From the IMG/VR virus record IMGVR_UViG_3300000553_000004, positions 150,734 to 214,733 of that record: DNA of 64,000 nt; one strand, written 5' to 3'. The notes beneath the pieces are model-generated. The model did not search any database and was not told where the DNA came from. It saw nothing but the letters and a program-made list of their open reading frames with translations. Every line of letters begins with the position of its first letter. Position 1 is the first letter of the stretch. Shown one piece after another: positions 20,401-57,143 of the stretch. Position numbers and translations under genes: made by a program.

Positions 20401-21855
20401 ATGAGTTTTAACACTGACAATTTACTTGAACCGCAAAAACCACACGCCGAGTTACTTTCGGCCTCACTCGCCGCCAACGGTATTTCGTGGGATGCGTCTG
20501 GAACTGGTATGGGAAAAACGTTCGTTGGCGCCGCCATCGCTCGCCATCGCAATAAAAAGTTCGCCGTCATCTCTCCGAAGCTGAACATTCCGAAGTGGAA
20601 GGCGACGCTTGACACGTTCGGTATGAAACCCGAATTTATCATCAATTACGAAAAATTGGCCCGTGGTAACACGGATTACTATCACTATCGTACCAAGGGA
20701 ATGACCAAGCAGGAAGTCCCCCATTTTCTCCGTGGCGAATTCAAACTTCCCCGTGGTTGCAAAGACATGGAAATTTATTTCGACGAAAGCCACCGCATGA
20801 AAGGCTACGAGTCATTAAACGCTGGTTTACTCTACTCGGCAAGCGAACAGGGAATTCCGATTCACCTTATGTCTGCTACGCAGGCTATGACACCGCTTGA
20901 CATGCGAGCCTTTGGTTACGCCGCCGGTCTTCACAAGGGAATGAATCATGTGAAGCTTGATAACTTTGGGATGCGCAAGTTTAAATCGTTCATGGAAGAA
21001 GCGGGAGCAGAATATACCGGCCGTTGGGGTTCCATGTTTTTCGACTGTAATAAGCCGGAGTCAATCACAAAGTTGCAGGAAATTCGTCGCCAGTTGTTTG
21101 ACGTTAAAAAGATTGCCAGTCGCATGAAACGTGAAGACTTTGGTGACATCTTTCCTAATAATCAGATTGAATGCACGCCTTACGACATGGGTGCGAATGG
21201 CGACAAGATTTCCCGTGTGTATGAAGATATGCAGAATGAGCTTGCCAGATTGGAAAAATTCTCTGAAAACTATTCTCAACATATCTTCGCCGTCCTGACC
21301 AAGGCTCGCCGACTGGCCGAATTGTATAAGGTTCCTACTCTCTGTGAACTCGCCGAGGATATGATTGAAGAGGGCAAGTCTGTTCTCATCTTCGTCAACT
21401 ATACTGATAGTATCGACGCGCTTTATGCTCGTTTGTCAAAGGTTTTCGGCGAGGAAATGATTGGACGTATTTACGGTGGCCAGACATTCAACGCTCGCCA
21501 CTCCGACATCGCCGACTTTCAATCCGACAAAAAACGGATTATGCTTGCCAACCTCACCGCTGGTGGTGAATGTATTGATTTGCAAGACATTACGGGAAAA
21601 CATCCTCGGGTGTCTTTCATCAATCCCTCATATCGAGCCATCTCGGTTTTACAGTGTATCGGTCGCCATGACCGCGCAGGTGCAAAGTCTGATTGTCTCA
21701 CTAACTTAGTCTTAGCGCATGGGACAATTGAGTCAAGCGTTGGCGCCAAGTTCAACGGTAAAAAGGGACACTTGGATATTCTGAATGACGGTGACTTTGT
21801 ACCGGATGGGATTAGTTTCACGACGTCACGCATCGTCGCAGGAATGGATGTCTGA
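20401..21855 (+). CDS. superfamily 2 (SNF2-like) helicase/ATPase
   Basis: GTGMGKT, DESH, SAT, QCIGRHDRAG. Confidence 0.88.
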   Translation: MSFNTDNLLEPQKPHAELLSASLAANGISWDASGTGMGKTFVGAAIARHRNKKFAVISPKLNIPKWKATLDTFGMKPEFIINYEKLARGNTDYYHYRTKGMTKQEVPHFLRGEFKLPRGCKDMEIYFDESHRMKGYESLNAGLLYSASEQGIPIHLMSATQAMTPLDMRAFGYAAGLHKGMNHVKLDNFGMRKFKSFMEEAGAEYTGRWGSMFFDCNKPESITKLQEIRRQLFDVKKIASRMKREDFGDIFPNNQIECTPYDMGANGDKISRVYEDMQNELARLEKFSENYSQHIFAVLTKARRLAELYKVPTLCELAEDMIEEGKSVLIFVNYTDSIDALYARLSKVFGEEMIGRIYGGQTFNARHSDIADFQSDKKRIMLANLTAGGECIDLQDITGKHPRVSFINPSYRAISVLQCIGRHDRAGAKSDCLTNLVLAHGTIESSVGAKFNGKKGHLDILNDGDFVPDGISFTTSRIVAGMDV

Positions 21856-22916: not shown

Positions 22917-23015
22917 TGGCCTTTAGCTCAATGGCAGAGCAGAGCACTCACGCGGGCAGTTACGCCTGCATCGTTAATGCTTTGGTTGACAGTTCGAGTC
23001 TGTCAAGGCCAACCA
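22917..23015 (+). tRNA. tRNA (probably CAU, Ile2/Met) with 24-nt insertion in anticodon loop
   Basis: TGGCCTT/AAGGCCA acceptor, canonical D and T arms, 31-nt anticodon loop CTCA[24 nt]TAA. Confidence 0.75.
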
Positions 23016-23622
23016 TTTTATTATTAGGATAATGTAATTCCATGTGACAGTTATGACATAATAATTGACATTTATTAACTTCAATTTGTAATTTATTGAA
23101 GGAATATCCCGACATTTTTCTTAAATCCAATCCACTTTCTTTTTCATTTGGATTTTTGTGATGAAACGTTAATGCTGAATAATTTCTGTTGTATCCACAA
23201 TTACTACATTTACCACCCAATTGTTTAATAAAAAATAATTTTCGTTCAATCCCACGATTTTTATTTTTAGTATAATTATTTTTTTCATTTTGAAAATTAA
23301 ATTGACTTTTACTAACTTTATATGTTCCTTCACTCATCGCAATAGTTTTTAAGTTATACTTTTTTAACCAATATCTTATGTTTGTTTGAGAAGATGACAA
23401 CATTTTGGCTATTTGATATGTTGATTTGTTTTGATTTATTAACTCTTTTAATTTATCAAGTGGAATTTCAACGTGGTCATAAGGAGAATTTATTGTTTTA
23501 ATTCCAAGTTTTTTCATATATCGTTTTGTCGTAGTCACCGGCATATTCAATTCTTTGGCAATTTTATAGTATCCATATCCTTTTTTAGATAGTTCTTTAT
23601 ATTTTTCTATTAGATGCTCCAT
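22960..23622 (-). CDS. HTH + HNH homing endonuclease
   Basis: Two HTH-like repeats; CSNCGY…FHH…CQLLCHNCH. Confidence 0.85.
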   Translation of the reverse strand: MEHLIEKYKELSKKGYGYYKIAKELNMPVTTTKRYMKKLGIKTINSPYDHVEIPLDKLKELINQNKSTYQIAKMLSSSQTNIRYWLKKYNLKTIAMSEGTYKVSKSQFNFQNEKNNYTKNKNRGIERKLFFIKQLGGKCSNCGYNRNYSALTFHHKNPNEKESGLDLRKMSGYSFNKLQIEVNKCQLLCHNCHMELHYPNNKMVGLDRLELSTKALTMQA

Positions 23623-23952
23623 AGTTTAATTTATGTTTATACTCATAAGTAGTAAACTATGAACCAAAACAACAATAAATCCACGCTTGACATTATTTTA
23701 TTTTGGTTGTAATGTTTGGTATGGGAATCGAATACATAAAAGACGGAAATGGTCAAATCATTGGAAGTAAAAACGGCGACTGGATTAGAGATAAATCGGG
23801 TCGCCAAATTGCCCGTTTCAATGAAGGAACAAATCAGACTTTGACGGCTGATGGTAAGAGATTCGGACAAGGCAATCAATTGACGGCCGCCTTGAAGTCA
23901 AAAGGAAAATAACGACGCTTGACATTTTTGGTTTCTTTGTTAGTATGTATTT

Positions 23953-24330
23953 GTTGTTCGTAAGTAAAGAATTGGTGAAAACCAGAGTGTTGAAAGCGAA
24001 CAAACTGGTCGGTCTGAGATGAACGGTAAGAGTCACTTAAATCATGTGATGTTTCCGTTCTGTACTGGTAGAGCCCGTAGATTGGTCCGATACGGCTACA
24101 AATTTGGCCTCTTGTTCCACCCTCAATGGGTGTTGGTGAAAGTCATCACGACTCCTTTGTTGGGGTTTTAACAATGCTGATAATTTTTGGTGAATGAAAC
24201 CCCGCGGGGTGGAGTTCGCAAATTGGCCTCTTGTTTCATCATCCTCAATGGGTGGTGATGGTGTAAGAAAACATGAAGACCTTCGGTTTAAGAAGGGATA
24301 ACAAAGCTAATTCGATTTCCCGAAAGGGGC
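23953..24330 (+). ncRNA. candidate structured ncRNA with internally duplicated motif
   Basis: Own promoter 23917-23946; no credible ORF; aaat(t)tggcctcttgtt + TCAAT-loop hairpin occurs twice. Confidence 0.55.
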
Positions 24331-24363
24331 TTGACAGACTAAGAAGTTCTGTTAAGATAAGTT

Positions 24364-24610
24364 TGTTCCGTGACTGAGTAACTGCTACTGTTAGCAGTAA
24401 GGTGATGGCAGGGTGAAGAATCCTGTTAGACACGAAAGTAACTCGGAGTAGGTAAGGCAGAGAAACTGATGGGTCGTACAACCGTTGAGGTTTTTCGTAG
24501 ACACGTATATATGCTATAACAGCGTGTCTTAGGTGGCGACGGCTGCCAGCTGGCTGAATAACCGAAAGAGTGAGGATAGTCGAGAGTAACAAGCGAGTCT
24601 CTCCGGAACA
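24364..24610 (+). ncRNA. candidate structured ncRNA
   Basis: Own promoter at 24329; ends pair (tgttccg/cggaaca); internal hairpins. Confidence 0.55.
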
Positions 24611-24672
24611 TTAAATTTCAACGCTTGACAACGGGTCAAGTCGTGGTAAGATAGTTTTGTTGGTTTTAGGAT

Positions 24673-24756
24673 TGCGGAGACAAGCCGAGGGACGCTGGCC
24701 ACGCTCATAACGTGGGTTAATAACTATGAATGGTTCGACTCCATTCTCCGCTACCA
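24673..24756 (+). tRNA. atypical tRNA-Met(CAU), initiator-like 1:72 mismatch
   Basis: GCGGAG/CTCCGC with T.T at 1:72; CCACG-CTCATAA-CGTGG; aberrant D arm, long variable region. Confidence 0.7.
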
Positions 24757-25066
24757 AATTTCGATTAGATAAGGCTGGAGAAAATCAGTCTCGGGCGCTT
24801 GCCGCCTCAAAAGTCGGTAGTTACGATACGTAAGTTGTGGCAACACAATGTAACCGGAAATAACTTCTAATTAGAATGAGTCAGTTGTCCCGTTGGTGGG
24901 ATAAGTCGGCGAAAGCCGATGGTGGGGAAGGTCCACGATTGACAAGAACCCTGAGTTAAGGTCCAAACCGTAATGAATCCAGATATACTTGGATGACATT
25001 CGCCTTCAACTCACGGGACATTTTTTGTAAGTGTTTTCAAAGTTTGAGGACTACTTATTTGTAGAT

Positions 25067-25142
25067 GCGGGTTTCATATAATTAGAAGTATGGGATTCAT
25101 CCGAATTCACGTCCGGTCGAGCATTACCCGGAACTCGCTCCA
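25067..25142 (+). tRNA. atypical tRNA-Gly(UCC)-like
   Basis: GCGGGTT/AACTCGC, U73, CCA; TCC in anticodon loop; no GG in D loop, no TTC in T loop. Confidence 0.55.
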
Positions 25143-25545
25143 ATTTCTTCTCAGTGGTGGTTTACAAACATATCTTGAAGTCGGGCAATCTCTTCATTCA
25201 ATTCCGTTTCAACTTTATTCACCGCGTTCAAACATTCAAGCGGCATAAAGCAGTTGTATTTCTCATTCCAGAATCCTTCCTGACGTTTACTGACTCCGGT
25301 CGAAGCTGCCGTGTCATCACCGCTGGCAGCATATTGAAGCGCCTTATCATCACTTGAAAACCGCTTGGTGTGAGTTGCGTTGGTATACGGAGGAAAGAAT
25401 TTGTATGTTTTTTTCATATGGTTAGTTTAACAAATTACTTTGAATAGTCAAGCCTCACACCGGTATGGTGGTACCACCAGCGCATAAAATTAGGATACCC
25501 CACCCGTATAGGATGGAGTACCCCTAGCGCTTGAATCACCGGCCC

Positions 25546-31004: not shown

Positions 31005-33056
31005 ATTTTTGTTTTGTTGTTTGTTTTATTAACGACTTCAATTTATCACAGTAATCTATTTAGTCAAGCGGTCAGTCCCACCACATACGAGTCACATTGT
31101 CGAAGGGATATTTGTGTTCAATGTAATCACAATAATCGGCCCCACACACGTTTTTAACCTTGCCGGTGACATACATACAGACACTTAACTCACGAGCGAG
31201 GATGATTTTACAATCATCGGGGAGGGATTCCAACATGGACGGTGTGAATTCGTTGTATTCAGGACAAGCCTCTTCCATGATTCGGATTGCGGTCACTTTG
31301 TCCACGGGTGAGACAGCCCGAAAATCCAATTGACGAGTCTCTTCGTTGTAGGCAATCAGAACCGAACGGCGAACGGTTTCATTGATGAATTTTTGGTTAA
31401 TAATCATGACTTAAATTTATCAAATGTTTATTGTAAGTCAAGCCTCATACATCTACGCTTGACATTATGGTAATGTTTGATATTTTAACCACATGAATTT
31501 GAAGTCCACTATTACCGATGTTTGTTCCGCCATCCTCACTCAACATCTTGGGTCCATTGAAAACGTCGTGATTGATTCGGCCTGTAAGACTGTTATTACC
31601 GAGTGGAATACTCATCACACCGAACAGATTGACACTCGCCACGAACTCGCCGAGTGGAGTCGGACGATGGATGGTATCAGAACCGAACAGCTCGGATGTG
31701 GTAATTGTGAACATTGTTCATGTGGCGAATCCCATTAATTTTATGTCAGTACAATACATTGAAAACGAAATCGTTCATCTCAATGGTGAACTCGTAACCG
31801 TAGTCCGTCAATTCACTCAGACTCAGAGTGATTCATGGAACGGTCAACTATCCGTAATCAAGGTCGGTGAGAATCGGTATAAGTATCTCATCACTGCGAT
31901 GGATGGCAAGTCGACGTTATTTTCAATGTGTGATGTTCTCCGAGTCGAACCGTCTCTATCAGTCAGTGTGGGAACTTCCCAAATAATCCGACTGAAAGGT
32001 TCAATGTAATGTGTATTATTGTTTTATTCGCTCTATTAGGTTTACCGATAGGCGCAGTCGGTTTGTTCTGTCTCATCTACTTCTTCTTTTTCATGAGTCG
32101 GTGACGCTTGACATTAATTAAATGTTTGGTATTTTAATCACATGAATAACAATTTACTTTTACAGGCTCAGAAATGGTTGGCTACTATCGGCATCAAATC
32201 CGAAGCATGTCAGACCTTTCTCAAAGTCAGTCGCAAAGATGTCGACGACAGTGGCCTTTTCGAAACCGATTCATTTCTTCGTGAATTGAAACTTGGTATC
32301 GGTAGTAATAAACTCTATCTCGGATTGGATGATGTGGCGAACTATCACATCAAAGCATTCTAACCCCACACGGGGAGTGGGTACCCCCAGCGCATTACCT
32401 TTTTGGGACCCCCAGCGCTGTTTCACCCGCTACCCGCGCCTGAATACTGCGCTGGTGACGCTTGACAATTAAAACAAACAATGTAGTATTTCAATATGAA
32501 TGAATACATCGTCAATCTCACTTGGTCTGTAACCGGCTCGGTCAAGGTCAAGGCAAACTCACCCGAAGAAGCTGCCGAACTAGCTAAGGGCCCTACGGTT
32601 TCCTTGCCCGAATCCAATTATTATCTCGAAGATTCAATCACCTGTAACCCTGATGCCGACGTCCGGTTAATATCGTAATACTATGAAACAACTACTGACA
32701 TGGTTACGTAAACGTACACCGTCGTTTATTTGCGCAGTAATAGGTCACGGGCATCTTTCAACAGTCGAACCGTATCAAACGATATGGACATACAAAAATT
32801 ATAAGGGACTGACCGTAGAGGATTTAACGAAGACCGATAACGTATCCGAAGTATCAGTCCGCGGAAAGTTAAAATGTAAACGTTGTGGACAGATTTCCAT
32901 CGGTAACGTTAAATATAAAAACTATTGTTAGTTTAACGTTAAAGGACACCAATACACAATAAACCATATGGCGCCTAATAGGCGGTCATACATGCGCAGA
33001 ATTGTGGCGTACTTGAAGTATATTACCATTTTTTATCGCAACGTCAAGCGCCAGGA

Positions 33057-33132
33057 GTTAACGTTAAAGGAATTAACGCAGGCCTTGGTCCCACATTCTC
33101 GGCGCCTTTCGGTCGGCCTCATCATCTCTCAC
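33057..33132 (-). ncRNA. small RNA family C copy 2
   Basis: Promoter 33133-33168; GTGAGAGATGATGAGGCCGA…CGCCG…TGCGTT. Confidence 0.5.
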
Positions 33133-33345
33133 ATGAATAGTTTAACAAATAAGACCGAGAAGTCAAGCGGTGGGAAAACGTGTGAGTTTTATTGGCAAAG
33201 TTTGGATACGTCCAAACACAATCCAATGGTTCACTCACATGAATAGTTTAACAAATAAGACCGAGAAGTCAAGCGGTGGGAAAACGTGTGAGTTTTATTG
33301 GCAAAGTTTGGATACGTCCAAACACAATCCAATGGTTCACTCACA
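33128..33345. repeat. exact tandem duplication, 106-bp unit (promoter + hairpin RNA)
   Basis: ctcaca at 33128, 33234, 33340; identical units. Confidence 0.92.
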
Positions 33346-34404
33346 ACCCGTAAGAGTTAGCCAGTCTGAATCCGTTAACAGAGGTCGAGCTGAGGAAGTG
33401 GTTATCTAGAAACCTTAAACTGTCATTTCGTTAAACATAATACGGAAACCGAACTGCTTTTGTGTCCCTTACATTGTCTTTCCTTTACACCATCAATCTA
33501 TCATACTATCCAAAAGAGTCAAGCGTGGTCTGACACCGCTTGACAATAGTTAAAACAATGATAGTATTCAATTATGAACGGAAAGATTAAATTCGACGAA
33601 CTGAGTGACTTGGCAGAGTTTCTCAAACACTTCACCGGTAGCTCGGCTATCTTTGAAGTCCGCCAAGACATGACGACGAAACGGTGGATACTTGAATTTA
33701 CCGGAGGCTTTTAATTATGAAAATTACAACAGTTGTCGAGAATAATCCGGCGAACGTATGAAAACCGGCCGCAAAGTCGCCGTCATTACATATATCCAAG
33801 TCATGATGTTCAAGGCTTGACATTAGTTAAACATTTGGTAAACTTTTTATATGAAGAAATTCTGTATGGTTGCCATTTCCAACCTGTCATTCACAAGGGG
33901 AAAGCGGTGGGCTGAAAAGTATGTGGAGTTGCGAATGGAATTTCATCGTAAACACGGCCACGGGTTGATTCTGTCAACGTGGCATGGCGTCGAATTTTTC
34001 GACAACGTGTTAAAGGCCCTCAATGGCGATATGTGTAAGGAACCCAAAGGGGAATACCGAAATAATTTCCTCAAACTGATTGAGATTGGTTCGAGGGAGG
34101 CTTGACATTAGTTAAACATTTGATACAATTTCTATATGACAAAAACCACCTTAGTCTTTATTGGGACGAACATCAGCCCGAAAGTCGGCGACATTCTGAC
34201 TGACTTCCGAGGCGATACCGAAATTTTCTGCTCGTCGAATCCGCCCTACGAGCCCGAGGACAGTCTCAACCGCGGCGCCAAGGTATACACCCGCAAGGCC
34301 GGAAAGACAAGTCAAAATCACAGTTATCCTTCCGTGTATGGGTTGGAATTTGTCCTGACGCCCGAGGCTTGACAATCCAAGACAAATGTGGTATGATTCA
34401 GCCA

Positions 34405-34845
34405 ATGAAAAAAGAATTGTCTGCAATGATTTTCCCGGTTGAGAACTATACCGATAAAATCCATTTTGGTGTTAAAAGTCAAATGGAAAAATATTCCCAC
34501 TTGTCTTTTACCATCGGACAGCTCAAGCCATATCTTCAAAGTGGTTACCCTTGGTTGAAAGATTTAAGTGAACGTCAAGACATTCTTCTCAAACAAATTA
34601 TAAAAACGGGGCTTGCCAAATTGGTTCAATTGGGTATGGTTAAGAAAGTCACAAGTAAGGTTCAAGTGGAACCACAATGGCAATGGGCTTCAAAGGTCGC
34701 CGAGAGTGGCTACACGAATATCACCAACGAGAACGAAGTCGCACAGACTGACGAAGCCCGCAAGGCCGCCAGTCGTCGGGCAATTGGTGGACGTTCCCTT
34801 CACAGACTCAACGGTAAAGCTAAGCTCGGACAGCTACACGCTTGA
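34405..34845 (+). CDS. hypothetical, possibly winged-helix
   Basis: Start after promoter at 34366; GLAKLVQLGMVKKV. Confidence 0.6.
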   Translation: MKKELSAMIFPVENYTDKIHFGVKSQMEKYSHLSFTIGQLKPYLQSGYPWLKDLSERQDILLKQIIKTGLAKLVQLGMVKKVTSKVQVEPQWQWASKVAESGYTNITNENEVAQTDEARKAASRRAIGGRSLHRLNGKAKLGQLHA

Positions 34846-34875
34846 CAATAGTTAAATATTTGGTAGTATTTCTAT

Positions 34876-35223
34876 ATGAAATTACTCACCAAACAAATCG
34901 AAAAAGCTCTGGCCAATCCCACCCTCAACGGCCAAAACGCTCAATATCCCATCTGTAAGTTTTTCAATCCGTGTGGAGCTGCAACGTGGCTCATCTTCGC
35001 CCGTGAAACTGGCGACTCGGCAGACATCCTTTGGGGTGTGGCTGACCTCGGGTTCGGTTGCGTCGAATATGGGACAATCAGCTTGTCAGAGCTCCAAAAT
35101 CTCCGTCTCCCTTTCGGTCTGACCATTGAACGTGATTTACATTGGGCGCCCAAGACTCACGCCAACGGTGACAAGTGGAACCTCGCCGACTATCTGAAAC
35201 TCAACTCTCTGTCGTCAATCTGA
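34876..35223 (+). CDS. DUF2958-like protein
   Basis: KFFNPCGAATWL…DLGFGCVEYGTISLSEL…GLTIERDLHW. Confidence 0.8.
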   Translation: MKLLTKQIEKALANPTLNGQNAQYPICKFFNPCGAATWLIFARETGDSADILWGVADLGFGCVEYGTISLSELQNLRLPFGLTIERDLHWAPKTHANGDKWNLADYLKLNSLSSI

Positions 35224-35757
35224 CACCGCTTGACAATTCTCAAACATTTGATAAAATACTTTTATGATTAATTTCATTATCCCAAAAACCTCCATGTGTG
35301 TCGTCATTTCCTATCGGGACGGCAACAAAACCGAAACTCTCATTCCTACTCCGTGTAACAACGCGGATTTGCGGAATACAATGTTGATGAAACATCGAGT
35401 GGGCTTCTCCGAGATTCGGGGAATCAAGTCCGTCGAGGCCGGCGAGATGTTTCGCGGCCGGTGACACGCTTGACAATTACCGAATGTTTGGTAACTTGTT
35501 TAGGTAAGAAGAATTTAAAAATCATGGTTGTTGGTTGGTTCGGGGCTTTTCTTTTTTCTCCCCGATGGTCCCTATATTTTGGGAAACCAACCAACAATCG
35601 AATCTGGTGGCTGTTTGGGACTATCCGTGATATAATCGTGGGTCGCACGGGACCTCGTTACCAAAACTCTAATAGCTACCGTTACACGGAGTCAAGCCTC
35701 ATTCCGAGTATATGGAGTGGGGCTTGACTCCTGCAAATCTTTTGTTAAACTATTCAT

Positions 35758-35815
35758 GTGAGGCGAATCAAGCCGGAAGGGAGTTACGCGACCCGTAATT
35801 CCTTTATCGATAAAG
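35758..35815 (+). ncRNA. small RNA family A copy 3
   Basis: Promoter 35722-35757; GTGAGGCGAATCAAGCCGGAAGGGAGTTACGC. Confidence 0.6.
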
Positions 35816-36506
35816 ATGGGACGCTTGACAATAGTTAAATGTTTGGTATATTGTATTTACATATGACACCTGAACAGACCAAACTAATCTCCGACTTGGC
35901 CGCCGACTTGAAACCAATGGTTAAAGATATTGAGGCCGGCATACCTACCACCCAAAACAATTACGGCCGTTATGGGTCGCTCATCAGTCAATTGTCAAAG
36001 GGTGACAAACGAGTCGGCGCCATCATCGCTCTGGCGCTGATTGAAGCCGGTGCGAATCGTGTTGGTGTTCAAAACGCACTGAAACTCTTTGTGTAAGGCT
36101 TGACATTTCTTTAACATTTGATACACTTTCTATATGAAAAAACTATTCAAACAAAAACCGCGCAACCAAGTTGGGTATCGTTACAGTAACAATTACATTG
36201 GAACTGTCACTGTCACGCCGGAAAATCTGAAACGACTCTCGGAGTTTCGTCAAGCCGTCCGTGAAATCGGTCGCTCGACTTCGATTCGTGGCCGGTCAGC
36301 CAATCGTCGGGCTCTTGCCGAACGCCATGGTTTGATATATAACATGGTCTTGTCAGACGTTCCCGCCAAGTTCGCAACGTCGCTCGATGTTTACTGGCGT
36401 TAATAATTTGTCAAGCGTTGTGTCGCAGTAAACGTCACCATTATTCAGTGTGATGATTGAAAGATGCAACGCTTGACAATAGTTAAAACAATGGTATTCT
36501 TTGGTT

Positions 36507-36941
36507 ATGAATAACACAATCGACCTCGACAAACAATTTTTCTTCGGTGGTAACGCCACCTTCACCGTTGAATCCGAAAAATCGGGCGAACATAAGACCT
36601 ACAAAATCCGCCGGACGAAGCCCACCCCGCGTTTCCCGAACCCGTCGCTCATGTTGTCACTCCTCAGTGGCCCGTGTAATGAAACGAATTACAGTTATAT
36701 CGGTATCGTTAACGAAGAAACCGGCTCGCTCCGTCTGACCAAGGCGAGTAAACGGAATGAACAGAGTCCCGACGTTTTAACCTTCAATTGGTTAATGAAA
36801 CATCTCTTTACCGATAAAGTTCTAATGAATGCAAAGGTACACCACGAAGGGAAGTGTGGAGTCTGCGCAAGAAAATTGACAGTTCCCGAATCAATTTTGA
36901 GAGGCATAGGTCCCGAATGTTGGAGCCGGATTGCCGGTTGA
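36507..36941 (+). CDS. DUF6011-like Zn-finger protein
   Basis: CGVCARKLTVPESILRGIGPEC. Confidence 0.8.
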   Translation: MNNTIDLDKQFFFGGNATFTVESEKSGEHKTYKIRRTKPTPRFPNPSLMLSLLSGPCNETNYSYIGIVNEETGSLRLTKASKRNEQSPDVLTFNWLMKHLFTDKVLMNAKVHHEGKCGVCARKLTVPESILRGIGPECWSRIAG

Positions 36942-37014
36942 GGCTTGACAAGTCCCCGTGTATAACAGCGGGGATTTTGTCCTGCGGTAAACTTTCGGGC
37001 TAAAAATCAATGCA

Positions 37015-37069
37015 GGTGTAGTATCGACGTTCCGCTTGTTCAGCTCTCTTTTGACTCCGTATGTCTCAC
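37015..37069 (-). ncRNA. small RNA family B copy
   Basis: Promoter 37070-37105; GTGAG…AAGCGGAACGTCGATACTAC. Confidence 0.5.
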
Positions 37070-38736
37070 ATGGATACTATAACAAACTATCCCGCCGAGT
37101 CAAGCGTCGTAGAGTGAGGCTTGACATTCCTTTAACATTTGATACACTTTTTATATGATTAAAGGAATTACAATTTTAAGCCGCGATGGAAAACATAAAG
37201 GTCACTATACAGGCGGCGTCCGGCCCTGTCAAATGGAAGGTTGTCGTGGGAGTCGAATGGCTATCAGATGGGACGATGGAAAACTAACATATCCTTGTAG
37301 CACTTTGACTAAAGCCATTTCGTCGACCACGCATAAAATAATGTGACGCTTGACATTCCTTTAACATTTGATAATCTATCTATATGATTTTAACAGCTAA
37401 CGAGGAAACTCGGTTTAATTTATTGGAGGAAAAGTTTTCCAAGGGACAATGCACCGAGCCTGAAATTATCGAACTGCAAGAACTGCTCGACCGTTATTAC
37501 AACAATTGTCACGCTTGACATTAGTCAAACATTTGATACACTTTCTTTATGACAATTTCACAACTCGCCAAATTGAATAAGAAACACGGCGGCCATTTTT
37601 TCGACCATGACAACATGAAGGTTGCCGGTGATACACAGAAAAGTTATCGGATTGAATCCGACGAACTGAATAAGACCGTGATTCTCACTCGCAAACGGGA
37701 TAACCATCAATGGGAATTTTCCGCCAAGACCGGCCGCGTTACTCACGCTTGACATTTCACCAAACAACCCTATAATCATTTTACATATGCCACCTATCAA
37801 AAAGATGACTTTTAATGAGTGTATGGACGGTTATATCGCCGCCCTCGACACTATCACACAACAACAGATTGACGCCCTCGCCTATATCTTCGGCGCAAGT
37901 GGGTGTGGTTGGACGAAGGAAAAGGCTATCGCCGAATTGGGATTCGAGAAACACGACGCAGGTGATGAACTCGACGACAACGCTTGACATTCCTTTAACA
38001 ATTGATACACTTTCTATATGACAAAATCATACACACACGAACAAGTCACTTATGGGGCCAAGGGCCGCCGGTGGGAATTTACCGCCCCCAATTATCAATT
38101 TGCGACGCCGACGATGCCGGGAGGGGTCATTACGGCCCACAAGGTTGCCCGAGTCATCAACGGCTCGCATAAACGGTGTGACGGGATGGACAATCTGGCG
38201 CGGGGGAAGATGTCCACCATTTTCCACAAGGCCGCAACGGCGGCCAGCCGGAGGATTCGGTAAAAACAAACAAGGGGCGAACGGTGGGCGCAGTTCCACT
38301 TCGCAAGATGAAAACATTAAACGTTCGCCCCTCTTTCTTCACCGCTTGACAATTTTTAAATGGTTGGTAATATTCAGATATGAAAACAACCAAGGAAATC
38401 AAAAACTTTTTAAAGGAAATGGGCCTCACTGTCAGAGGTAACACGGGTACCGGAAAGTCTAAATGGCAATCTTTCCATGTTCCGTCTGACATCATTCCCA
38501 TTAGCCAGCTTCAAGTAATGAAATTCAGTCTGCCGGAGTTTCCGGTGGAGTTTCGCAAACTCTGTATCCGAACGGTTTATCCTGATTCTGAAACTCTTTA
38601 CTCGCAGGACACGGCCGGAAATGTCGGAAAGTATAGCATCGCCATGTTGCCCCACCAATGGGAACACGTCATGGCGGTCTGGCCGCTGAAGTTCATCGCT
38701 TGACATTTCTCAAAACAACTGTAAACTGTCTTTGTC

Positions 38737-39105
38737 ATGAAAAACAAAATTATCGCCTTCGCCGCCTTGGTTCAAGCCGAAACCGAGGCACGCATGAAAG
38801 CCGGAGGCAGTCACGAATCCACCATCGACGTCCACGCAAAGACGACGGTGAAAGAAGGCAAGAAATATGCCAAGGTTGACATCGGCCAGAGCGGCCGTTA
38901 CATGGTCGAGATGAGCACGGGCAACATCTTCGGCATCAAGGCTTACGGTCAAATCCACAAGGGGCATTTTTACGGGACTGTGGACACGATTAACGATTAT
39001 TACTGGGGCGAATACTACCCGATTCACAAGACCAACCCCGTCGGATGTTGCAAGTGGTCGGTGCCCAAACTCACTTTCGCTCCCCAGCCTGTTGCTGGGG
39101 CGTGA
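38737..39105 (+). CDS. hypothetical phage protein
   Basis: Start after promoter at 38698; GKKYAKVD…GNIFGIKAYG. Confidence 0.7.
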   Translation: MKNKIIAFAALVQAETEARMKAGGSHESTIDVHAKTTVKEGKKYAKVDIGQSGRYMVEMSTGNIFGIKAYGQIHKGHFYGTVDTINDYYWGEYYPIHKTNPVGCCKWSVPKLTFAPQPVAGA

Positions 39106-39185
39106 GGTTCGGTCAATCGGCATCAAGCCTCCCCGAGAAATTGGGCGAGGCTTGACTGCTGCGGTGAATATGTTAAACTTTCCTT

Positions 39186-39249
39186 GTGAGAGACGATGTG
39201 GCTGAAATACGCCGGAGAGTAGGGTAACGGCGGCTGCGTTCGTTTTTTT
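39186..39249 (+). ncRNA. small RNA family C copy 3
   Basis: Promoter 39150-39185; GTGAGAGACGATGTGGC…GCCGGAGAGTAGGGTAACGGCG; T-run after. Confidence 0.55.
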
Positions 39250-39337
39250 GAGTGTATAGGAATGAGACACGCTTGACAATTCATTTAAGTATTGTATTCT
39301 GTATTTGTAAACGGTAAACATCAAAACAAATAACAAT

Positions 39338-39796
39338 ATGAACGCTAACGAAATTATCTCACAAGTCGAGTCTCGCAGAGGCCGTCACGTCAAGGTTACA
39401 TGGCAACGTGTGGCCAAAGTCCTAAAGGGTGCTTCCTCACTCTTAATTGTCAAGCGCACTTCCGCTTGGGTTCGTTCAGGAATTGATTACGCAAATCTCA
39501 ACGTAGTTAAAGAAGGCATCGCAAATGGTGAACGTGGCGAAGTCCAACCTTTGCCTTGGGGTGAATGGATTCAATTCCCCTTTATCATCGGCCACAAGGG
39601 GACTGAATATGTTCGCCTTTATCCGGCGACGTTTGACAACCTTAAACCGGAAGTTGAATGGTCAATTAACGGAAGACCGGCAAGCTATGAAAGTTGTGAG
39701 CAGTATCTTCTTTCGTCTGAAAAACGGAAGGATGAAGATGACCGCCCGCTTTGTTTTACTGTCAAGGCCGAATCGGTCATTGACATTGCAGATTAG
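39338..39796 (+). CDS. hypothetical phage protein
   Basis: 152-aa ORF, A/C-rich leader. Confidence 0.75.
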   Translation: MNANEIISQVESRRGRHVKVTWQRVAKVLKGASSLLIVKRTSAWVRSGIDYANLNVVKEGIANGERGEVQPLPWGEWIQFPFIIGHKGTEYVRLYPATFDNLKPEVEWSINGRPASYESCEQYLLSSEKRKDEDDRPLCFTVKAESVIDIAD

Positions 39797-39802
39797 TTCG
39801 GT

Positions 39803-40501
39803 TCATATTGTAACCAGCCCCGATGAAAGACTCTGGGTCTGGTTTTTTTTCTTTTTATGGGCAAGACTCATTTTAAGTCTTGTTTCTGCTGAACGTTTCT
39901 TTCCCCAATGTGGACTATTAGGACCTGTGTTTACATTTCTTAAATGTTCTTTTTCATTTTCTGTTAGTTTTCTATGTGGTGAAGAATTAGACATTTTTAA
40001 TTTGACTTCATCGGAATATTTTTTGCCTATTTTGGCAATAGACATTTTCTCTCTTGCATAATCACTAAAAAATTGTTCGGTTGATTCAAATTTTAGATTG
40101 TAACATTTGTCTTGTTCATTTCTGGCAATGTCAAGATATTTTTGTTCTACTAATATTCTTTTATTAGGTTCGGTAATTTCTACTATTAGAAATTCAAAAT
40201 TATCCTTACCATATTTATTCCACGCACGCTGTAAGTAATCATTATAGTGTTTATTTTCAATTAAACAATTCTTATGTTCTCTCCATCGTCGTTGAATACT
40301 ATTAGCACTTCCAACATAATACTTGCCATTAGTCTTGTTTACTATCTTGTAAATTCCCGATACGTTTCTTTTCGTGGTAGTCGGCAAGTTTTTCTTTTCT
40401 AATTCTGTCTTTGTGTCGTTCGTAAAATCGTTTGGCACGTTCATTGTTTCGTTTTCTTTGTTCGTCAAGTGTAAGTTTGTCGTTTCGTTTTGGCATATCA
40501 T
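39803..40501 (-). CDS. GIY-YIG homing endonuclease
   Basis: SGIYKIVNKTNGKYYVGS; NUMOD3-like repeats. Confidence 0.88.
   Translation of the reverse strand: MICQNETTNLHLTNKENETMNVPNDFTNDTKTELEKKNLPTTTKRNVSGIYKIVNKTNGKYYVGSANSIQRRWREHKNCLIENKHYNDYLQRAWNKYGKDNFEFLIVEITEPNKRILVEQKYLDIARNEQDKCYNLKFESTEQFFSDYAREKMSIAKIGKKYSDEVKLKMSNSSPHRKLTENEKEHLRNVNTGPNSPHWGKKRSAETRLKMSLAHKKKKNQTQSLSSGLVTI
40329..40496 (-). CDS. small basic endonuclease-associated protein (overlapping)
   Basis: MPKRNDKLTLDEQRKRNNERAKRFYERHKDRIRKEKLADYHEKKRIGNLQDSKQD. Confidence 0.65.
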   Translation of the reverse strand: MPKRNDKLTLDEQRKRNNERAKRFYERHKDRIRKEKLADYHEKKRIGNLQDSKQD

Positions 40502-40559
40502 AAGTTATCCTTTCATTTAATAAGTATAATATGAAATTTGATAACGATAGAAAATTTAC

Positions 40560-40626
40560 AATTATCGTTAAAGGAATCAACGCACTCGTAGTATCGACCT
40601 CCCGCTTTTACGCTTCGTTATCTCAC
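40560..40626 (-). ncRNA. small RNA family B copy
   Basis: Promoter 40627-40662; GTGAGATAACGAAGCGTAAAAGCGGGAGGTCGATACTACGAG, near-identical to 16564 copy. Confidence 0.55.
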
Positions 40627-41335
40627 ACCAATAGTTTAACAAATAACCCAGATAAGTCAAGCGTCGGAGAGTGAGGCTTGACAATTTCTATTAGTAATAT
40701 AAACTACCTATATGAAAAAGTTCACGCACGTCGGTCATGTGGTTGGAACGGGAGACTTATATCCCAGCTACAACACCAAGCTCCGCGAAACTAAAACTCT
40801 GTGGGTGACGCCCAAGGGCATCAAGTTCCGCAAGTCTGATGGGTTCAAGCCGAATGATGAATGGCCGAAAACTCACTTGGACTTGGCCACGGTTATGTCG
40901 CAGGTCACCATCTGATATTGATTGAGGCTTGACGTTTCTTTAACATTTGATACACTTTCTATATGAAAAAAACAACTGACCAACTTATCGCCGAATACAA
41001 ATCCGAATTCATCCGCACCAACGGAAAAGAAATTTTCTGCTGCTGTTACACCAACGGCTGGTTCCGTGTCGGTAACTCGGATAAAGTTCGCCGTGTCAAA
41101 TTCGAGGAAATGATTGCCACTTTACAGAGTCGCCCGACCGTCAGCGACCGCACCGAAATGGTGAATGGTGTTCCGACCGTCATCAAGGCTAGCCAACACG
41201 TCGTCCGGTCCTATCTGGCGCCGCACTCCGATATTGTCGAAGAGCGTGACACTCCGCACTGCTGCTCCCCTTCTAACGAAACGTATTGGTCCATGTGAGG
41301 CTTGACAATACTCAAACAATCTATATCATTTAAAC

Positions 41336-41794
41336 ATGAGAACAAAATACTTCAAAAATATACGGGCATTTGACGCCATCAAACGGCTCGCTAACGATAG
41401 TCTCACCGCCCCATACGAGCAGACCGATTCGTGGAAGCCGTCCGCATACTCAATCTCGGAAGTATACAACCGCAACGACTTCCAACAAATCACTCGCCAA
41501 GAGGCGCGGAAGTTACGCCCGACGGCCTTCCGCACTCCGTTTTCTAAGGCTTGATTTCTTAAACAATTGTGGTAATCTAACCATATGAGAACAAAATATT
41601 TTACGAAACAATCGTCCTTCATCCGTGTGTGGCGAATCAGGAACAATTTCGTCGCATACTTTTCACGCGGACGGGGTTATGTGTGGTGTCGGTCGGCGTG
41701 TGATAACCTCGAAGACTGTATCGCCGGCAGCCTGACTCCCGTCACCCGCGACCAAGCTCGCAAGATGGAACCCAAGGCTTTCCGCAAGGCTTGA
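41336..41794 (+). other. two paralogous ~70-aa ORFs (41336-41554, 41585-41794; third member 43302-43520)
   Basis: MRTKYF…(I/V)TRxxARKxxPxAFR; each with own promoter. Confidence 0.7.
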
Positions 41795-43969
41795 CATTCC
41801 TTTAACATTTGATACACTTTCTATATGAAAAAGAAACTATCCAAAGCTCTTCAGGCCGCAATCAAACGTTATCTTGACAATCGTGACAATCGTGACAGTC
41901 AATCGGCAACGTTCGTCTGGGACAAGCCGGCTGACCAAAAAGCAATCTCTGAAATTGCTTTCACTGAAAAGTCAATGGTTCGTGTCGAACAATCATCTGG
42001 TCGTTGGTGGTTCACCGTGAAACGTGGCGCCCAACGTTGGACGTTCTACGCCCATGAAGACAATTACACGCAGACACTCACCGGCACGCAGGCAACGTCC
42101 TGTAGCCCGCTGACAACACTGTTCGGCAGGGCTTGATTTAGTTAAAACTTTCGGTAAACTGGCTTTATGAGAATGTTATCATCTACGCCGCCCCCGGAAG
42201 AGGAAACTCAAGCAGACCGTGACCGGCTGACTCGTCAAGGCCCGCCACTAGGCAAGCATCGTATCAATCTCGGGCCGCTCGGTTATGTGACCAAAGGCCA
42301 CTGGGGACGCAAGCCTGATTGGGCATTCGCAAATTGTGTCTTGGTGCTGGAGTTGGTGCTGGGTTCGGCTATGTGGGTTCGGTATCCTCGCCATGATATC
42401 GTCGCTTGACTTGTGGTAAACTTTCTATAAATTAAGTGTATGAGTTGCCCTTGTCCATGTTGTAAGACAGATTCCGACAATTTCGGTAAGCCACCGGTAA
42501 ACTGTCCAAAATGTAATAAACCAATGTGGAAGTGTTCCACAAGTTATGGCGCCGTTTGGGCGTTGCCGCCTATGTTAAAACATTTACGGGCTGGTAGTCT
42601 TCATGCTATTGTTTATGAATGTTACGAATGTAATGTGATTATACCAACAAATGTGAATCGTCACGATTATCATAAACGTCGTGACCCTGCTGATGGTGAA
42701 CTAAAACGTATGCTCACGGTAACATTATACCATGAGCCTGATTTTCAGACTTTTACCAAGTTTGGGCCATTTGCTAAGTCCGCTTGACTTTCTACAAACT
42801 TTCTATAAATTAAGTGTATGACGAAGACCGCACAAGAAGCTGAAGCACTCTCCAAGAAGCTACGGGTTGCTTTCGAGAAAGTCCAGAACAAGGAACACTG
42901 GAAGAATCCGATTGATGCCGTCATTCACAAGTCTGAAATGGATATCACCGGCGATGCCATTCAATTCTTCACCGGAACACAAGCCTTTTTCAGCTCCAAC
43001 AAACTGACTTTGGCCGAATGTGAGGCCGGCATGGTTCGTGTCACCGCTGCCGGTTACTACGCCGGCCCATGTAATTGATTTATGTTAATCACCAAACAAT
43101 TTGACGAAATCATCGTCGAACGAACACACTGCCCAAGTTGTCGGGCGCCAAGAGGCCATAACTGTTGCTCGGCCTTCGGTAACTTTGTCTCTCCACACAA
43201 AGACCGTGTGAAGGATTTTCAAAAGAGGTTCGATGTCAAGTTCACGGTGCTACCAAAGCTGAAGGCTTGATTTGTCAAAACAATCGTGGTAATCTAACAA
43301 CATGAAACGAGCCAAATATTACAAGATAGCCGGACTGTTCGCAGTGTTGCTTTGTCCTGCTGGTGGTGACAAGGGCTTCACTGTCCATGCTAACGGATTG
43401 CTTGGCGAACATTACAATCTGTCAACCGACTTCCCGAATGGTGGTATCAGCCGGATTAGTCGTGACGAAGCCGAACGGATTGCCCCTCGCTCAGCTCTCC
43501 GTCAATACAAGATAACATGACACTCGCCGACTTACAACATTTCAAATATGCTGGTGGTTATTTCAGAGACGCCAGAGTGCCAAAGGGCAAGACAGCTCCC
43601 GTGCTTCATGGTAGTGAAATCATTGAGGTTATACAGAAGCACCTGAATCCTCCAGTCGAACGACCTGGCAATGACCAGGCTTGTGTGGATGCTCAATGCC
43701 CTTGATACGCTTGACTTGAGCAAAGTTCTTGGTATCTTATCTATATGAAATTGATTCTCACCAAACACGCCGACCATGTTGAGGTTGAAGTGATGGACGG
43801 TAGCCTTCGCCTTCATTGCTACACTTTCAACAACATGAAACTTGCCGAGGCCTTTTGCACCGGCTTCCACTGTGCCAAGACTGTAATCAACGGCATGGTT
43901 CAATCTCTGCCACTCGGTTACGAGAAGCGGAAGGCTTGACCGGTGGGATTGGTGTGATATGATGTGGGT

Positions 43970-49978: not shown

Positions 49979-50370
49979 GGGCTCGTAATGGTTTCGACAT
50001 GATGTTGAAGATAAACGAAGCACGCCGAGGATGTTATCAGGACTCGTAAAAAGATAACAAAAACATAAATGCTAACCTTAACCGTTTGGCCAACCTCGAT
50101 TTTTCATTCTCGGTGAATGAAGTTGAGGTCGCAGTAGCTTAATAACTACTCCGTCGCACTGACCGACTTCCTCTAAGTTGGATGTGGCGTAAAATAGAGG
50201 AAGAACTGCTTGTAGTTTAAATTATAAGACTGATACGAAAGGCCAGTATGCCAATCTATGACATGTAGGTTGTTCATTACCGATAATGTCGAATTCACCA
50301 AAATGAAATAAGCGTGTAGCGTCGGTTGTTAGATATGTTATGGACGTTGGTTCAACTCCAACCGAGTCCA
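49979..50370 (+). ncRNA. ssrA: tmRNA
   Basis: 5' GGGCTCG…TTCGAC; tag ORF 50071-50142 ANLNRLANLDFSFSVNEVEVAVA*; 3' GGAC-GTTGG-TTCAACT-CCAAC-CGAGTCC-A with G3-U70. Confidence 0.92.
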
Positions 50371-57067: not shown

Positions 57068-57143
57068 ATCCCATTAACTCAGCGGCCAGAGTGATGCTCT
57101 CTAAAAGCTTTCGTCATCGGTTCGAATCCGATATGGGATACCA
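57068..57143 (+). tRNA. amber suppressor tRNA (CUA)
   Basis: 76-nt cloverleaf, loop CT-CTA-AA with CTA at 57101-57103 (positions 34-36), CCA encoded. Confidence 0.85.

What the first reader, a model, noticed from the sequence alone, without database searches (positions are those of the whole stretch)
23953..25020. Cluster of three or four unknown structured RNAs interleaved with tRNAs
Seen: ~1.1 kb without credible ORFs but with three promoters. Unit 1 (23953-24330) repeats AAAT(T)TGGCCTCTTGTT plus a hairpin with TCAAT loop (~24100, ~24220); ATTGG could pair with that loop as a pseudoknot. Unit 2 (24364-24610) is end-paired. Unit 3 (~24886-25020) is closed by tgtcccgt/acgggaca and has a GAAA-loop hairpin. 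Inference: novel ncRNA motifs (ribozyme, aptamer or protein sponge).
Basis: partly seen in the sequence, partly recalled or inferred. Interest (0 to 1): 0.65.

Follow-up and report, generated by a model that had tools for sequence, protein, structure and literature searches.

The report
Novel structured RNAs beside phage tRNAs
A 1.1-kb gene-free stretch of a giant freshwater phage encodes three undescribed, conserved folded RNAs around a tRNA-Met gene; their function is unknown, but one is conserved more strictly than the neighbouring helicase gene.

Summary
The window is part of a 215-kb (about 62% complete) freshwater jumbo-phage contig. Window 23953-25026 is an island of RNA genes. They flank an aberrant tRNA-Met (24673-24756).

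The three promoters are real members of a phage promoter family of about 60 copies. The same island is syntenic in more than 15 related metagenomic phage contigs.

All three RNAs show compensatory base-pair changes. RNAalifold z-scores against column-shuffled alignments are -8 to -11, about 96% of cells are paired, and 16/24 and 18/21 pairs covary. Indels are not multiples of three. No Rfam 15 family matches, in the window or in relatives.

U2 is 75-79% identical between phages whose helicase DNA is only 60-65% identical.

The ATTGG:TCAAT pseudoknot is not conserved, because ATTGGC is one strand of a covarying closing helix. The tgtcccgt/acgggaca helix of Unit 3 is not conserved either. Its 5' strand lies in a variable insert, and ACGGG pairs with CCCUG in a terminator hairpin.

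Function is unknown. The closest analogues are the orphan phage RNAs GOLLD and ROOL, which also lie at tRNA islands. No expression data exist.

The parts
23919..23946 (+). Promoter P1 (TTGACA, 16-nt spacer, TG-extended TAGTAT) driving U1
   Evidence: Member of the ~60-copy GCTTGACA-N14-TGnTAnnnT family. The -10 and the following GTATTTGT are conserved in more than 20 metagenomic loci.
23953..24328 (+). U1 RNA. It consists of a 5' helix P1 domain with a GNRA hairpin (23953-24008), hairpin H2 and two copies of module M.
   Evidence: Homologues were found in more than 12 loci. The 5' part has an alifold z of -4.7. It is single-copy in the genome. Rfam gives no hit.
24021..24060 (+). U1 hairpin H2. 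An invariant internal loop UAAGAG/UGUUYC sits between two covarying stems. This is the most deeply conserved part of U1.
   Evidence: Sequence lists. The outer stem varies as ACGG/CCGU, GCGG/CCGC, ACAG/CUGU and GGUGG/CCACC. The inner stem varies as CCAC/GUGG, UCAC/GUGA, CCAA/UUGG and CCGCC/GGCGG.
24100..24193 (+). U1 module M, copy 1. The closing helix pairs AUUUGGC..UUGUU with AACAA.GCUGAU. It encloses a covarying hairpin, the conserved UGGUGNAAG, and a second hairpin.
   Evidence: (86.8 bits).
24219..24323 (+). U1 module M, copy 2. This tandem duplicate is specific to the window phage.
   Evidence: 73.6 bits. Relatives carry one copy.
24331..24358 (+). Promoter P2 (TTGACA, 16-nt spacer, TG-extended TAAGAT) driving U2
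   Evidence: Conserved at the same place in L006, L009, L010, L011 and L017.
24364..24610 (+). U2 RNA. It is closed by GUUCCG/CGGAAC and holds at least 6 internal helices. It is the most widely conserved RNA of the island.
   Evidence: 23 of 65 pairs compensatory in 7 sequences. Alifold z is -8.4. It is present down to relatives with 50% helicase identity.
24625..24652 (+). Promoter P3 driving tRNA-Met and RNA-C
24673..24756 (+). tRNA-Met(CAU) number 2. This is a derived 84-nt form with a longer variable region, an altered D arm and a U1-U72 mismatch.
   Evidence: ARAGORN. The only Rfam hit is a 20-bit tRNA-Sec match. Alignment with normal 78-nt orthologues.
24757..24883 (+). RNA-C 5' domain. 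A long closing helix (AUUUCG..GA with UUCUAAU..GAAU) encloses covarying hairpins.
   Evidence: It has its own promoter in L009 and L011.
24884..24939 (+). RNA-C variable insert. It holds three small hairpins, including the GAAA-loop hairpin at 24905-24920, and is closed by GUCA/UGAC (24880-24883 with 24940-24943).
   Evidence: It is absent in 6 of 11 homologues. Fold.
24944..25026 (+). RNA-C 3' domain. A long covarying hairpin (24949-24961 with 25003-25017, containing inner helices) is followed by a U-run (25021-25026). It acts as the intrinsic terminator of the island.
   Evidence: 96.3% paired, 16 of 24 pairs compensatory.

Best explanation
Window 23953-25026 is an RNA-gene island of a roughly 350-kb freshwater jumbo phage. 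It contains three independent genes for structured non-coding RNAs (U1, U2, RNA-C) arranged around a tRNA-Met gene.

Shown:
- Each RNA begins with its terminal helix a few bases downstream of a strong host-type (sigma-70-like, extended -10) early promoter.
- RNA-C follows directly after the CCA end of the tRNA, and in some relatives has its own promoter.
- The island ends in the RNA-C hairpin plus U-run, facing a convergent protein-gene block.
- The folds are multi-helix junctions with GNRA loops and invariant unpaired nucleotides.
- The RNAs are conserved across a clade of phages. U2 is conserved more strictly than the helicase gene.
- They are not coding and belong to no Rfam family.

Inferred:
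- The RNAs are made early and abundantly.
- Their ends are trimmed by the host tRNA-processing enzymes: RNase P at the 5' side of tRNA-Met, which releases U2 or U1, and 3' tRNA processing, which releases RNA-C. In relative L099, U2 ends only 10 nt before the tRNA.
- They act in trans as compactly folded RNAs.

My most likely mechanism, at about 0.3-0.35, is a scaffold or decoy that binds a conserved macromolecular partner in the host translation, tRNA-processing or tRNA-targeting defence machinery. Less likely are RNA-only self-assembly as in ROOL/GOLLD (about 0.15), catalysis (about 0.15), a small-molecule sponge (about 0.1) and antisense regulation (about 0.1). The confidence of 0.85 given here is for the statement that these are genuine, independent, previously undescribed structured non-coding RNA genes; it is not for any one mechanism.
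For: - Promoters.
- Synteny (helicase, tRNA-Arg, tRNA-Met, U1, optionally U2, tRNA-Met, RNA-C, then a convergent block with a GP88-like gene) in loci.
- Covariation: U2 has 23 of 65 compensatory pairs. RNA-C has 28 of 53. Module M has 18 of 21 and the RNA-C 3' domain 16 of 24, with about 96% of cells paired against 77-83% in shuffles and 26-50% when partners are slid.
- Alifold z-scores are -8.4, -10.9 and -10.7.
- Covariance models find further divergent members: L013 at 59.8 bits, L017 at 37.5 and 28.5 bits.
- Indels that are multiples of three: 1 of 27 and 7 of 79.
- U2 is 75-79% identical where helicase DNA is 60-65% identical.
- No ORF follows on the same strand.
- No Rfam hit.
- ROOL and GOLLD are described as phage RNAs 'often near tRNA islands', and one GOLLD lies downstream of a tRNA-Met (bioRxiv 10.1101/2024.12.08.627333).
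Against: - There is no expression evidence. All public runs that hold the sequence are DNA runs.
- Transcript ends are predicted, not mapped.
- U1 has no terminator, and the window's U2 lacks the U-run that relatives have. The units may therefore partly be one read-through transcript.
- No partner protein is consistently adjacent. The small ORF upstream of U1 is conserved in only 3 of 8 loci.
- The alignments used for searches were fitted to the models.
- Only 7 (U2) to about 14 distinct sequences are available.
- Nothing tested here discriminates between the functional sub-hypotheses.
Confidence: 0.85

Rival explanations
1. The stretch is only leader, spacer and trailer RNA of a tRNA operon. 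Its hairpins would serve transcription termination and tRNA precursor processing, and would have no function once cut off.
For: The RNAs directly abut tRNA-Met. The RNA-C 3' domain is an intrinsic-terminator-like hairpin with a U-run. U1 has no terminator of its own.
Against: Spacers are not expected to keep 245-380-nt multi-helix folds with invariant unpaired nucleotides. U2 is more conserved than the helicase gene. Each unit has its own conserved promoter. In three relatives U2 has its own U-run.
Confidence: 0.07
2. U2, and perhaps U1, is a cis-acting sensor (riboswitch-like or T-box-like leader). It would control read-through into the downstream tRNA-Met and RNA-C.
For: U2 always lies immediately upstream of tRNA-Met, 10-73 nt away in L099 and L098 with no intervening promoter. 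It ends in a closing helix followed by a U-run in L043, L037 and L021. It has highly conserved unpaired nucleotides, as aptamers do.
Against: In the window and in several relatives a separate promoter sits between U2 and the tRNA, so tRNA expression does not depend on read-through. The terminal helix that precedes the U-run is also the helix that closes the whole fold, and no alternative anti-terminator pairing was seen. I know of no precedent for riboswitch control of a tRNA gene.
Confidence: 0.1
3. The units are highly divergent members of known RNA classes (GOLLD/ROOL, RNase P RNA, group I intron, Y RNA) that the Rfam models fail to recognise.
For: The context is the same as for GOLLD and ROOL: phage, tRNA island, freshwater lake, next to tRNA-Met. 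From memory, the U1 motif CGGUAAGAGCCAC resembles the GGUAAGAGCGCACC stretch of the bacterial RNase P specificity domain. Also from memory, GUUCCGUGACUGAG and GAUAGUC in U2 faintly recall the group I intron R and S elements.
Against: No hit to any of the 4227 Rfam families, even at E<=10, in the window or in relatives. Each unit is 2-3 times smaller than GOLLD or ROOL. The contig has no TROVE/Ro60 gene. The units are not inserted in any gene, so no exons exist. The motif resemblances are short and were recalled, not tested.
Confidence: 0.05
4. The region encodes small proteins, for example the stop-free antisense frame across U2 (window 24245-24592, 115 codons) or the 50-codon ORF at 24019-24171.
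For: The minus strand of U2 is free of stop codons over its full length in all five homologues.
Against: The plus strand is purine-rich, so the antisense strand is poor in stop codons. L021 has two open antisense frames. Twenty of 27 indels in U2 are single nucleotides and shift the frame between homologues. Substitutions come as compensatory pairs in stems. The ATG of the 24019 ORF is absent in relatives. No promoter of the phage family faces that way inside the region.
Confidence: 0.02

Closest known systems
GOLLD and ROOL RNAs (Rfam RF01998, RF03087). These are large ornate phage and prophage RNAs of unknown function that form RNA-only nanocages.
   Same: They are encoded by phages, 'often near tRNA islands'. 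One GOLLD lies downstream of a tRNA-Met, tRNAs can sit in the GOLLD linker, and the family was first seen in lake metagenomes. They have elaborate covarying folds and no known protein partner.
   Different: No sequence or structure match to either Rfam model. The units here are 250-380 nt, against 580 to more than 800 nt. Each has its own promoter. Multimer formation was not tested.
Phage T4 stable RNAs C and D (species 1 and 2) in the T4 tRNA gene cluster (from my own knowledge, not checked here)
   Same: They are small stable RNAs of unknown function, encoded among phage tRNA genes, co-transcribed with the tRNAs and released by the host tRNA-processing enzymes.
   Different: The T4 RNAs are about 120-140 nt. 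No sequence relation was tested, because T4-like records gave no match to the region. The RNAs here are larger and have their own promoters.
Bacterial and phage Y RNAs (YrlA) with Ro60/Rsr (PMC4201824, listed)
   Same: They are structured non-coding RNAs linked to tRNA-like elements, and are sometimes phage-encoded.
   Different: No TROVE/Ro60 gene in the 215-kb contig. No Rfam Y RNA hit. No tRNA-like domain is recognisable in U1, U2 or RNA-C.
Catalogue of about 8,500 candidate structured RNAs from IMG/VR (PMC10690425)
   Same: Same approach, and the source contig is an IMG/VR record.
   Different: These families have almost no IMG/VR relatives (only 3 contigs for U2). They may therefore have escaped that survey. 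Its tables were not available to check.

Membership tests
GOLLD RNA (RF01998) | Match to the family covariance model (conserved 3' domain) | tested here: not met
   No hit at gathering score or at E<=10, in the window or in homologous loci.
GOLLD / ROOL | Phage-encoded and located at a tRNA island | tested here: met
   tRNA-Arg and two tRNA-Met genes flank the RNAs. The contig is a virus record. The feature is as described.
GOLLD / ROOL | Assembly into homo-oligomeric RNA nanocages | not testable with these tools
   Needs native gels or cryo-EM.
ROOL RNA (RF03087) | Match to the family covariance model; about 580 nt | tested here: not met
   No Rfam hit. The units are 247-376 nt.
Bacterial RNase P RNA (RF00010/RF00011) | Match to the covariance model, including the P4 pseudoknot with CR-I and CR-V | tested here: not met
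   No hit at E<=10. Only a short recalled resemblance of the U1 hairpin H2 to GGUAAGAGCGCACC.
Group I intron (RF00028) | Match to the covariance model, and insertion within a host gene with flanking exons | tested here: not met
   No hit. Each unit starts at a promoter and lies in no gene.
Y RNA / YrlA | Ro60 (TROVE) gene in the same genome, usually adjacent | tested here: not met
   PF05731 is absent from the 215-kb contig. The contig is about 62% complete, so this absence is not absolute.
Retron msr-msd or DGR RNA | Reverse transcriptase gene nearby | tested here: not met
   PF00078 is absent from the contig.
Riboswitch or cis-regulatory leader of an mRNA | Protein-coding gene downstream on the same strand | tested here: not met
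   The next genes (25151 onward) are on the opposite strand and convergent. Only tRNA-Met lies downstream of U1 and U2.
Conserved structured non-coding RNA gene (generic) | Compensatory base-pair changes above controls, indels without codon periodicity, own promoter | tested here: met
tRNA (for 24673-24756) | Cloverleaf recognised by tRNA models | tested here: inconclusive
   ARAGORN calls tRNA-Met(CAT). The Rfam tRNA model does not reach threshold, and the only hit is a 20-bit tRNA-Sec match. Orthologues in relatives score 54-58 bits. The window form has an 8-nt longer variable region and a changed D arm.

The most novel reading that the evidence does not exclude
U2, alone or together with U1 and RNA-C, is a new class of functional RNA machine tied to tRNA-Met. 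It could be a trans-acting ribozyme, a tRNA-binding RNA, or a self-assembling RNA-only complex. The phage would use it early in infection to reshape or protect the tRNA and translation apparatus. This would explain why it is kept more strictly than the phage's own helicase.
Probability: 0.2. Interest if true: 0.85.

Novelty: new variant of a known kind. Interest (0 to 1): 0.62.

Why it matters
Orphan structured RNAs of phage tRNA islands (GOLLD, ROOL) have turned out to have unprecedented RNA-only architectures, yet their biology is still unknown. This island offers three smaller and more tractable RNAs in the same genomic niche. They have clear promoters, a defined modular anatomy and graded natural variants: a duplicated module, an optional insert, and presence or absence of U2 and RNA-C. 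One of them, U2, is under stronger constraint than a core replication protein.

They are ready-made candidates for structure probing, cryo-EM, pull-downs and self-cleavage or ligand screens. They may also help explain why jumbo phages carry tRNA islands at all. If they prove to be decoys against tRNA-targeting defences, or tRNA-handling ribozymes, that would be a new counter-defence or translation-takeover principle.

Tried and rejected
- Known families. Rfam at gathering score and at E<=10, on the window and on 13 plus 3 homologous loci, gave only tRNAs and tmRNA.
- Reference phages. blastn against 50,697 phage records gave no match.
- IMG/VR. The GP88-like neighbour gave three non-syntenic contigs without the RNAs. 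The helicase, the module motif and the U1 promoter pattern gave nothing.
- Bacterial genomes. A 23-nt invariant piece of U2 gave no match. The U1 hairpin pattern gave 50 hits, about the number I estimate chance alone would give. Several are GSGKS P-loop codons and none matches the U1 profile.
- Antisense-target idea for GGCCUCUUGUU as an anti-Shine-Dalgarno-like sequence. No complementary site exists in the phage contig. The segment later proved to be helical.
- Population variants. The four runs laid held identical low-depth DNA contigs and no RNA.
- Alternative genetic code. ORF statistics fit the standard code.
- Partner protein. The small ORF upstream of U1 is conserved in only 3 of 8 loci. 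TROVE, RtcB and reverse transcriptase are absent.
- Distant relatives. At 50-62% helicase identity they lack detectable module M and RNA-C but keep U2 and the U1 hairpin H2.

Full report
CONTEXT
The window is bases 150734-214733 of a single 214,733-bp IMG/VR virus record that CheckV rates about 62% complete. The same contig reappears as TBL_comb47_HYPODRAFT_10000011. Near-identical DNA is present in more than 20 freshwater metagenome runs. The contig has 38% G+C and ORF statistics that fit the standard code. It carries many tRNAs and a tmRNA. Related contigs reach 365 kb, so this is a jumbo phage.

THE OBSERVATION
Between the small ORF ending at 23912 and the convergent minus-strand gene ending at 25151 there is no credible ORF. 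Three promoter-like sites lie at 23919-23946, 24331-24358 and 24625-24652. Each matches 10 of 12 consensus positions and has a TG-extended -10. They are not chance matches. They share the extended motif GCTTGACA-N14-TGnTAnnnT, which occurs about 60 times in the contig, almost always on the coding strand in front of short early-type genes.

The repeat in Unit 1 is real. Unit 2 is end-paired. The GAAA hairpin exists at 24905-24920. Single-sequence folding is only moderately better than shuffles, with z of -3.3, -3.05 and -2.3. The window alone would therefore not settle the matter.

FINDING RELATIVES
Reference phages and IMG/VR gave almost nothing. The helicase 2 kb upstream (20401-21855) has a graded series of relatives, from 84% down to 44% identity, in the large protein collection. 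Fetching their contigs showed a conserved arrangement:
- helicase
- tRNA-Arg(TCT)
- tRNA-Met(CAT)
- a gene-free gap of 1-1.3 kb containing a second tRNA-Met(CAT)
- a convergent block with a GP88-like gene.

The U1 promoter and its first transcribed bases are so conserved that a pattern search of JGI metagenomes returned 29 further loci. About 17 distinct loci carry recognisable homologues.

U1 (23953-24328)
The predicted start, G23953, is the first base of a terminal helix (GUUGUUCG with CGAACAA). This helix covaries in relatives as GUGAUUCG/CGAAUCA and GUGGUUCG/CGAACCA, and it encloses a GNRA-capped hairpin.

Next comes hairpin H2 (24021-24060). Two covarying stems flank an invariant internal loop, UAAGAG opposite UGUUYC. 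This motif persists even in relatives with 50-62% helicase identity.

The 3' part is module M. Its closing helix is formed by AUUGGC..UUGUU and AACAA.GCYAAU. Inside are a hairpin whose stem covaries freely and whose loop is variable, a conserved UGGUGUAAG stretch, and a further hairpin. On the model-fitted alignment of 15 distinct sequences:
- 95.7% of cells are paired, against 77% in shuffles and 29-50% when partners are slid
- 18 of 21 pairs show compensatory changes
- the RNAalifold energy lies 10.7 sd below column-shuffled alignments.

The proposed ATTGG:TCAAT pseudoknot is not supported. The loop is UCAA, AACA, AAA or GAAA elsewhere, and ATTGGC is the 5' strand of the closing helix.

U2 (24364-24610)
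Seven distinct homologues align over the full length. The closing helix GUUCCG/CGGAAC stays paired in all of them, identical or with a G-U. Six internal helices carry compensatory changes, 23 of 65 pairs in all. One example is GAGAG/CUCUC becoming GAAGG/CCUUC. The alifold z is -8.4 on five sequences.

Long unpaired stretches are invariant. U2 is 75-79% identical between the window and phages whose helicase gene is 60-65% identical at the DNA level and 50-62% at the protein level. In three relatives it ends in CCGGAACAUUUUUU. In L099 it ends 10 nt before tRNA-Met.

The minus strand of U2 is stop-free in all homologues, but this reflects composition:
- the plus strand is purine-rich
- one homologue has two open antisense frames
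- 20 of 27 indels are single bases
- substitutions are paired across stems.

RNA-C (24757-25026)
It has three parts.
- A 5' domain (24757-24883) is closed by a 10-bp helix and contains covarying hairpins.
- A short helix, GUCA/UGAC, carries an optional insert (24884-24939). The insert is absent in 6 of 11 homologues. In the window it contains the GAAA hairpin and the tgtcccgt segment.
- A 3' domain is a long hairpin (24949-24961 with 25003-25017, plus inner helices) followed by a U-run.

Twenty-eight of 53 pairs are compensatory, and the alifold z is -10.9. The 3' domain is 96.3% paired, with 16 of 24 pairs compensatory.

Where its 5' strand exists it is mostly unpaired. The alternative pairing is kept in 11 of 11, with CCC/GGG exchanged for UUU/AAA. 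In L009 and L011, RNA-C has its own promoter, with the helix again starting about 7 nt after the -10. In the window it directly follows the CCA of tRNA-Met.

WHAT THE RNAS ARE NOT
- Not a known family. No Rfam 15 family matches at gathering score or at E<=10, in the window or in relatives.
- Not coding. Indels that are multiples of three are 1 of 27 and 7 of 79.
- Not mRNA leaders. No ORF follows on the same strand.
- Not linked to Ro60, RtcB or a reverse transcriptase, none of which the contig encodes.
- Not seen in bacteria. No bacterial genome in the GTDB representative set carries the invariant U2 23-mer. The U1 hairpin pattern gives only chance hits.
- Each RNA is single-copy in the contig.

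HOW IT PROBABLY WORKS
Shown: conserved promoters, conserved folds, a terminator at the end of the island, and adjacency to tRNA-Met in every locus.

Inferred: early, strong transcription by the host RNA polymerase, with maturation by the host tRNA-processing enzymes. RNase P cleavage at tRNA-Met would define the 3' end of the upstream RNA. 3' processing of the tRNA would define the 5' end of RNA-C. Action would be in trans, as compact tertiary folds, given the GNRA loops, multi-way junctions and invariant unpaired bases.

The data do not discriminate the molecular function. I rank the options as follows:
- a protein- or RNA-binding scaffold or decoy aimed at the tRNA, translation or tRNA-targeting defence machinery, about 0.3-0.35
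- RNA-only assembly, about 0.15
- catalysis, about 0.15
- a small-molecule sponge, about 0.1
- antisense regulation, about 0.1.

The rivals are inert operon spacers, a cis-acting sensor of read-through into the tRNA, divergent members of known classes, and coding sequence. They are listed in the Rival explanations section with the evidence against each.

COMPARISON WITH WHAT IS KNOWN
The closest analogues are GOLLD and ROOL. These are orphan, ornate phage and prophage RNAs 'often near tRNA islands'. One GOLLD lies downstream of a tRNA-Met, and tRNAs sometimes sit in its linker. The genomic niche is the same. Membership fails on the covariance models and on size. From memory, T4 stable RNAs C and D are a second analogue: stable RNAs cut out of tRNA precursors.

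These are therefore new RNA families within a known but unexplained kind of system. No expression data exist, and that is the main gap.

VERDICT
Two structural details and the boundaries of Unit 3 do not. I am about 0.85-0.9 confident that these are genuine, previously undescribed structured non-coding RNA genes, and about 0.3 confident in any specific mechanism. Interest is 0.62.

Noticed in passing
window 22917-23012 (and 22960-23622, minus strand): The first tRNA-Met(CAT) of the island carries a 24-nt hairpin-forming insert between A35 and U36 of the anticodon. Orthologues in four relatives are uninterrupted. An HNH homing-endonuclease gene on the opposite strand overlaps the 3' half of the tRNA. 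This could be a mini-intron, a remnant of an endonuclease invasion, or a disabled tRNA.
   Followed up: partly
window 24673-24756: The second tRNA-Met is a derived 84-nt form with an 8-nt longer variable region and a changed D arm. It falls below the Rfam tRNA threshold, and locus L036 shares this form. Most of the aligned orthologues appear to have a mismatch at positions 1:72 (U-U, C-A or A-A) but lack the three G-C pairs of initiator anticodon stems.
   Followed up: partly
whole contig; densest at window 32000-42000: About 60 copies of one promoter motif, GCTTGACA-N14-TGnTAnnnT, occur every 250-400 bp in front of very short genes. Many of these genes have almost no 5' leader (sequence).
   Followed up: partly
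window 57068-57143 and 49979-50370: A tRNA with the amber-reading anticodon CTA, called tRNA-Pyl by ARAGORN, and a phage-encoded tmRNA are present. Stop-to-stop ORF statistics nevertheless fit the standard code in the part of the genome held.
   Followed up: partly
U1 homologues, e.g. L036:620-670, L039, L034, L038, L098: Most relatives carry runs of G-tracts (GGGUAGGGAUAGGG...), which look able to form a G-quadruplex, just upstream of hairpin H2. The window copy lacks them.
   Followed up: no
L016:1076-4205: A related phage contig (NCBI MAG assembly) carries Cas7-like and Cas3-like genes a few kb upstream of the same helicase and RNA island.
   Followed up: no
L006:10437-10508, L015:7490-7559, L030, L034, L043, L038, L047: Downstream of RNA-C or tRNA-Met, several relatives have an odd tRNA-like gene that ARAGORN reports with a two-base 'anticodon' (tc), sometimes followed by tRNA-Glu(TTC). 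In the window, the corresponding 125 nt (25027-25150) has no recognisable gene.
   Followed up: no
L099:13560-13715 and L038: Distant relatives have a further conserved element of about 125 nt (GUUGGUGAAA.C.GUAAGCUGC...UUGUUUCCUCU) between a P2-like promoter and U2. It may be a fourth RNA family of the island.
   Followed up: no
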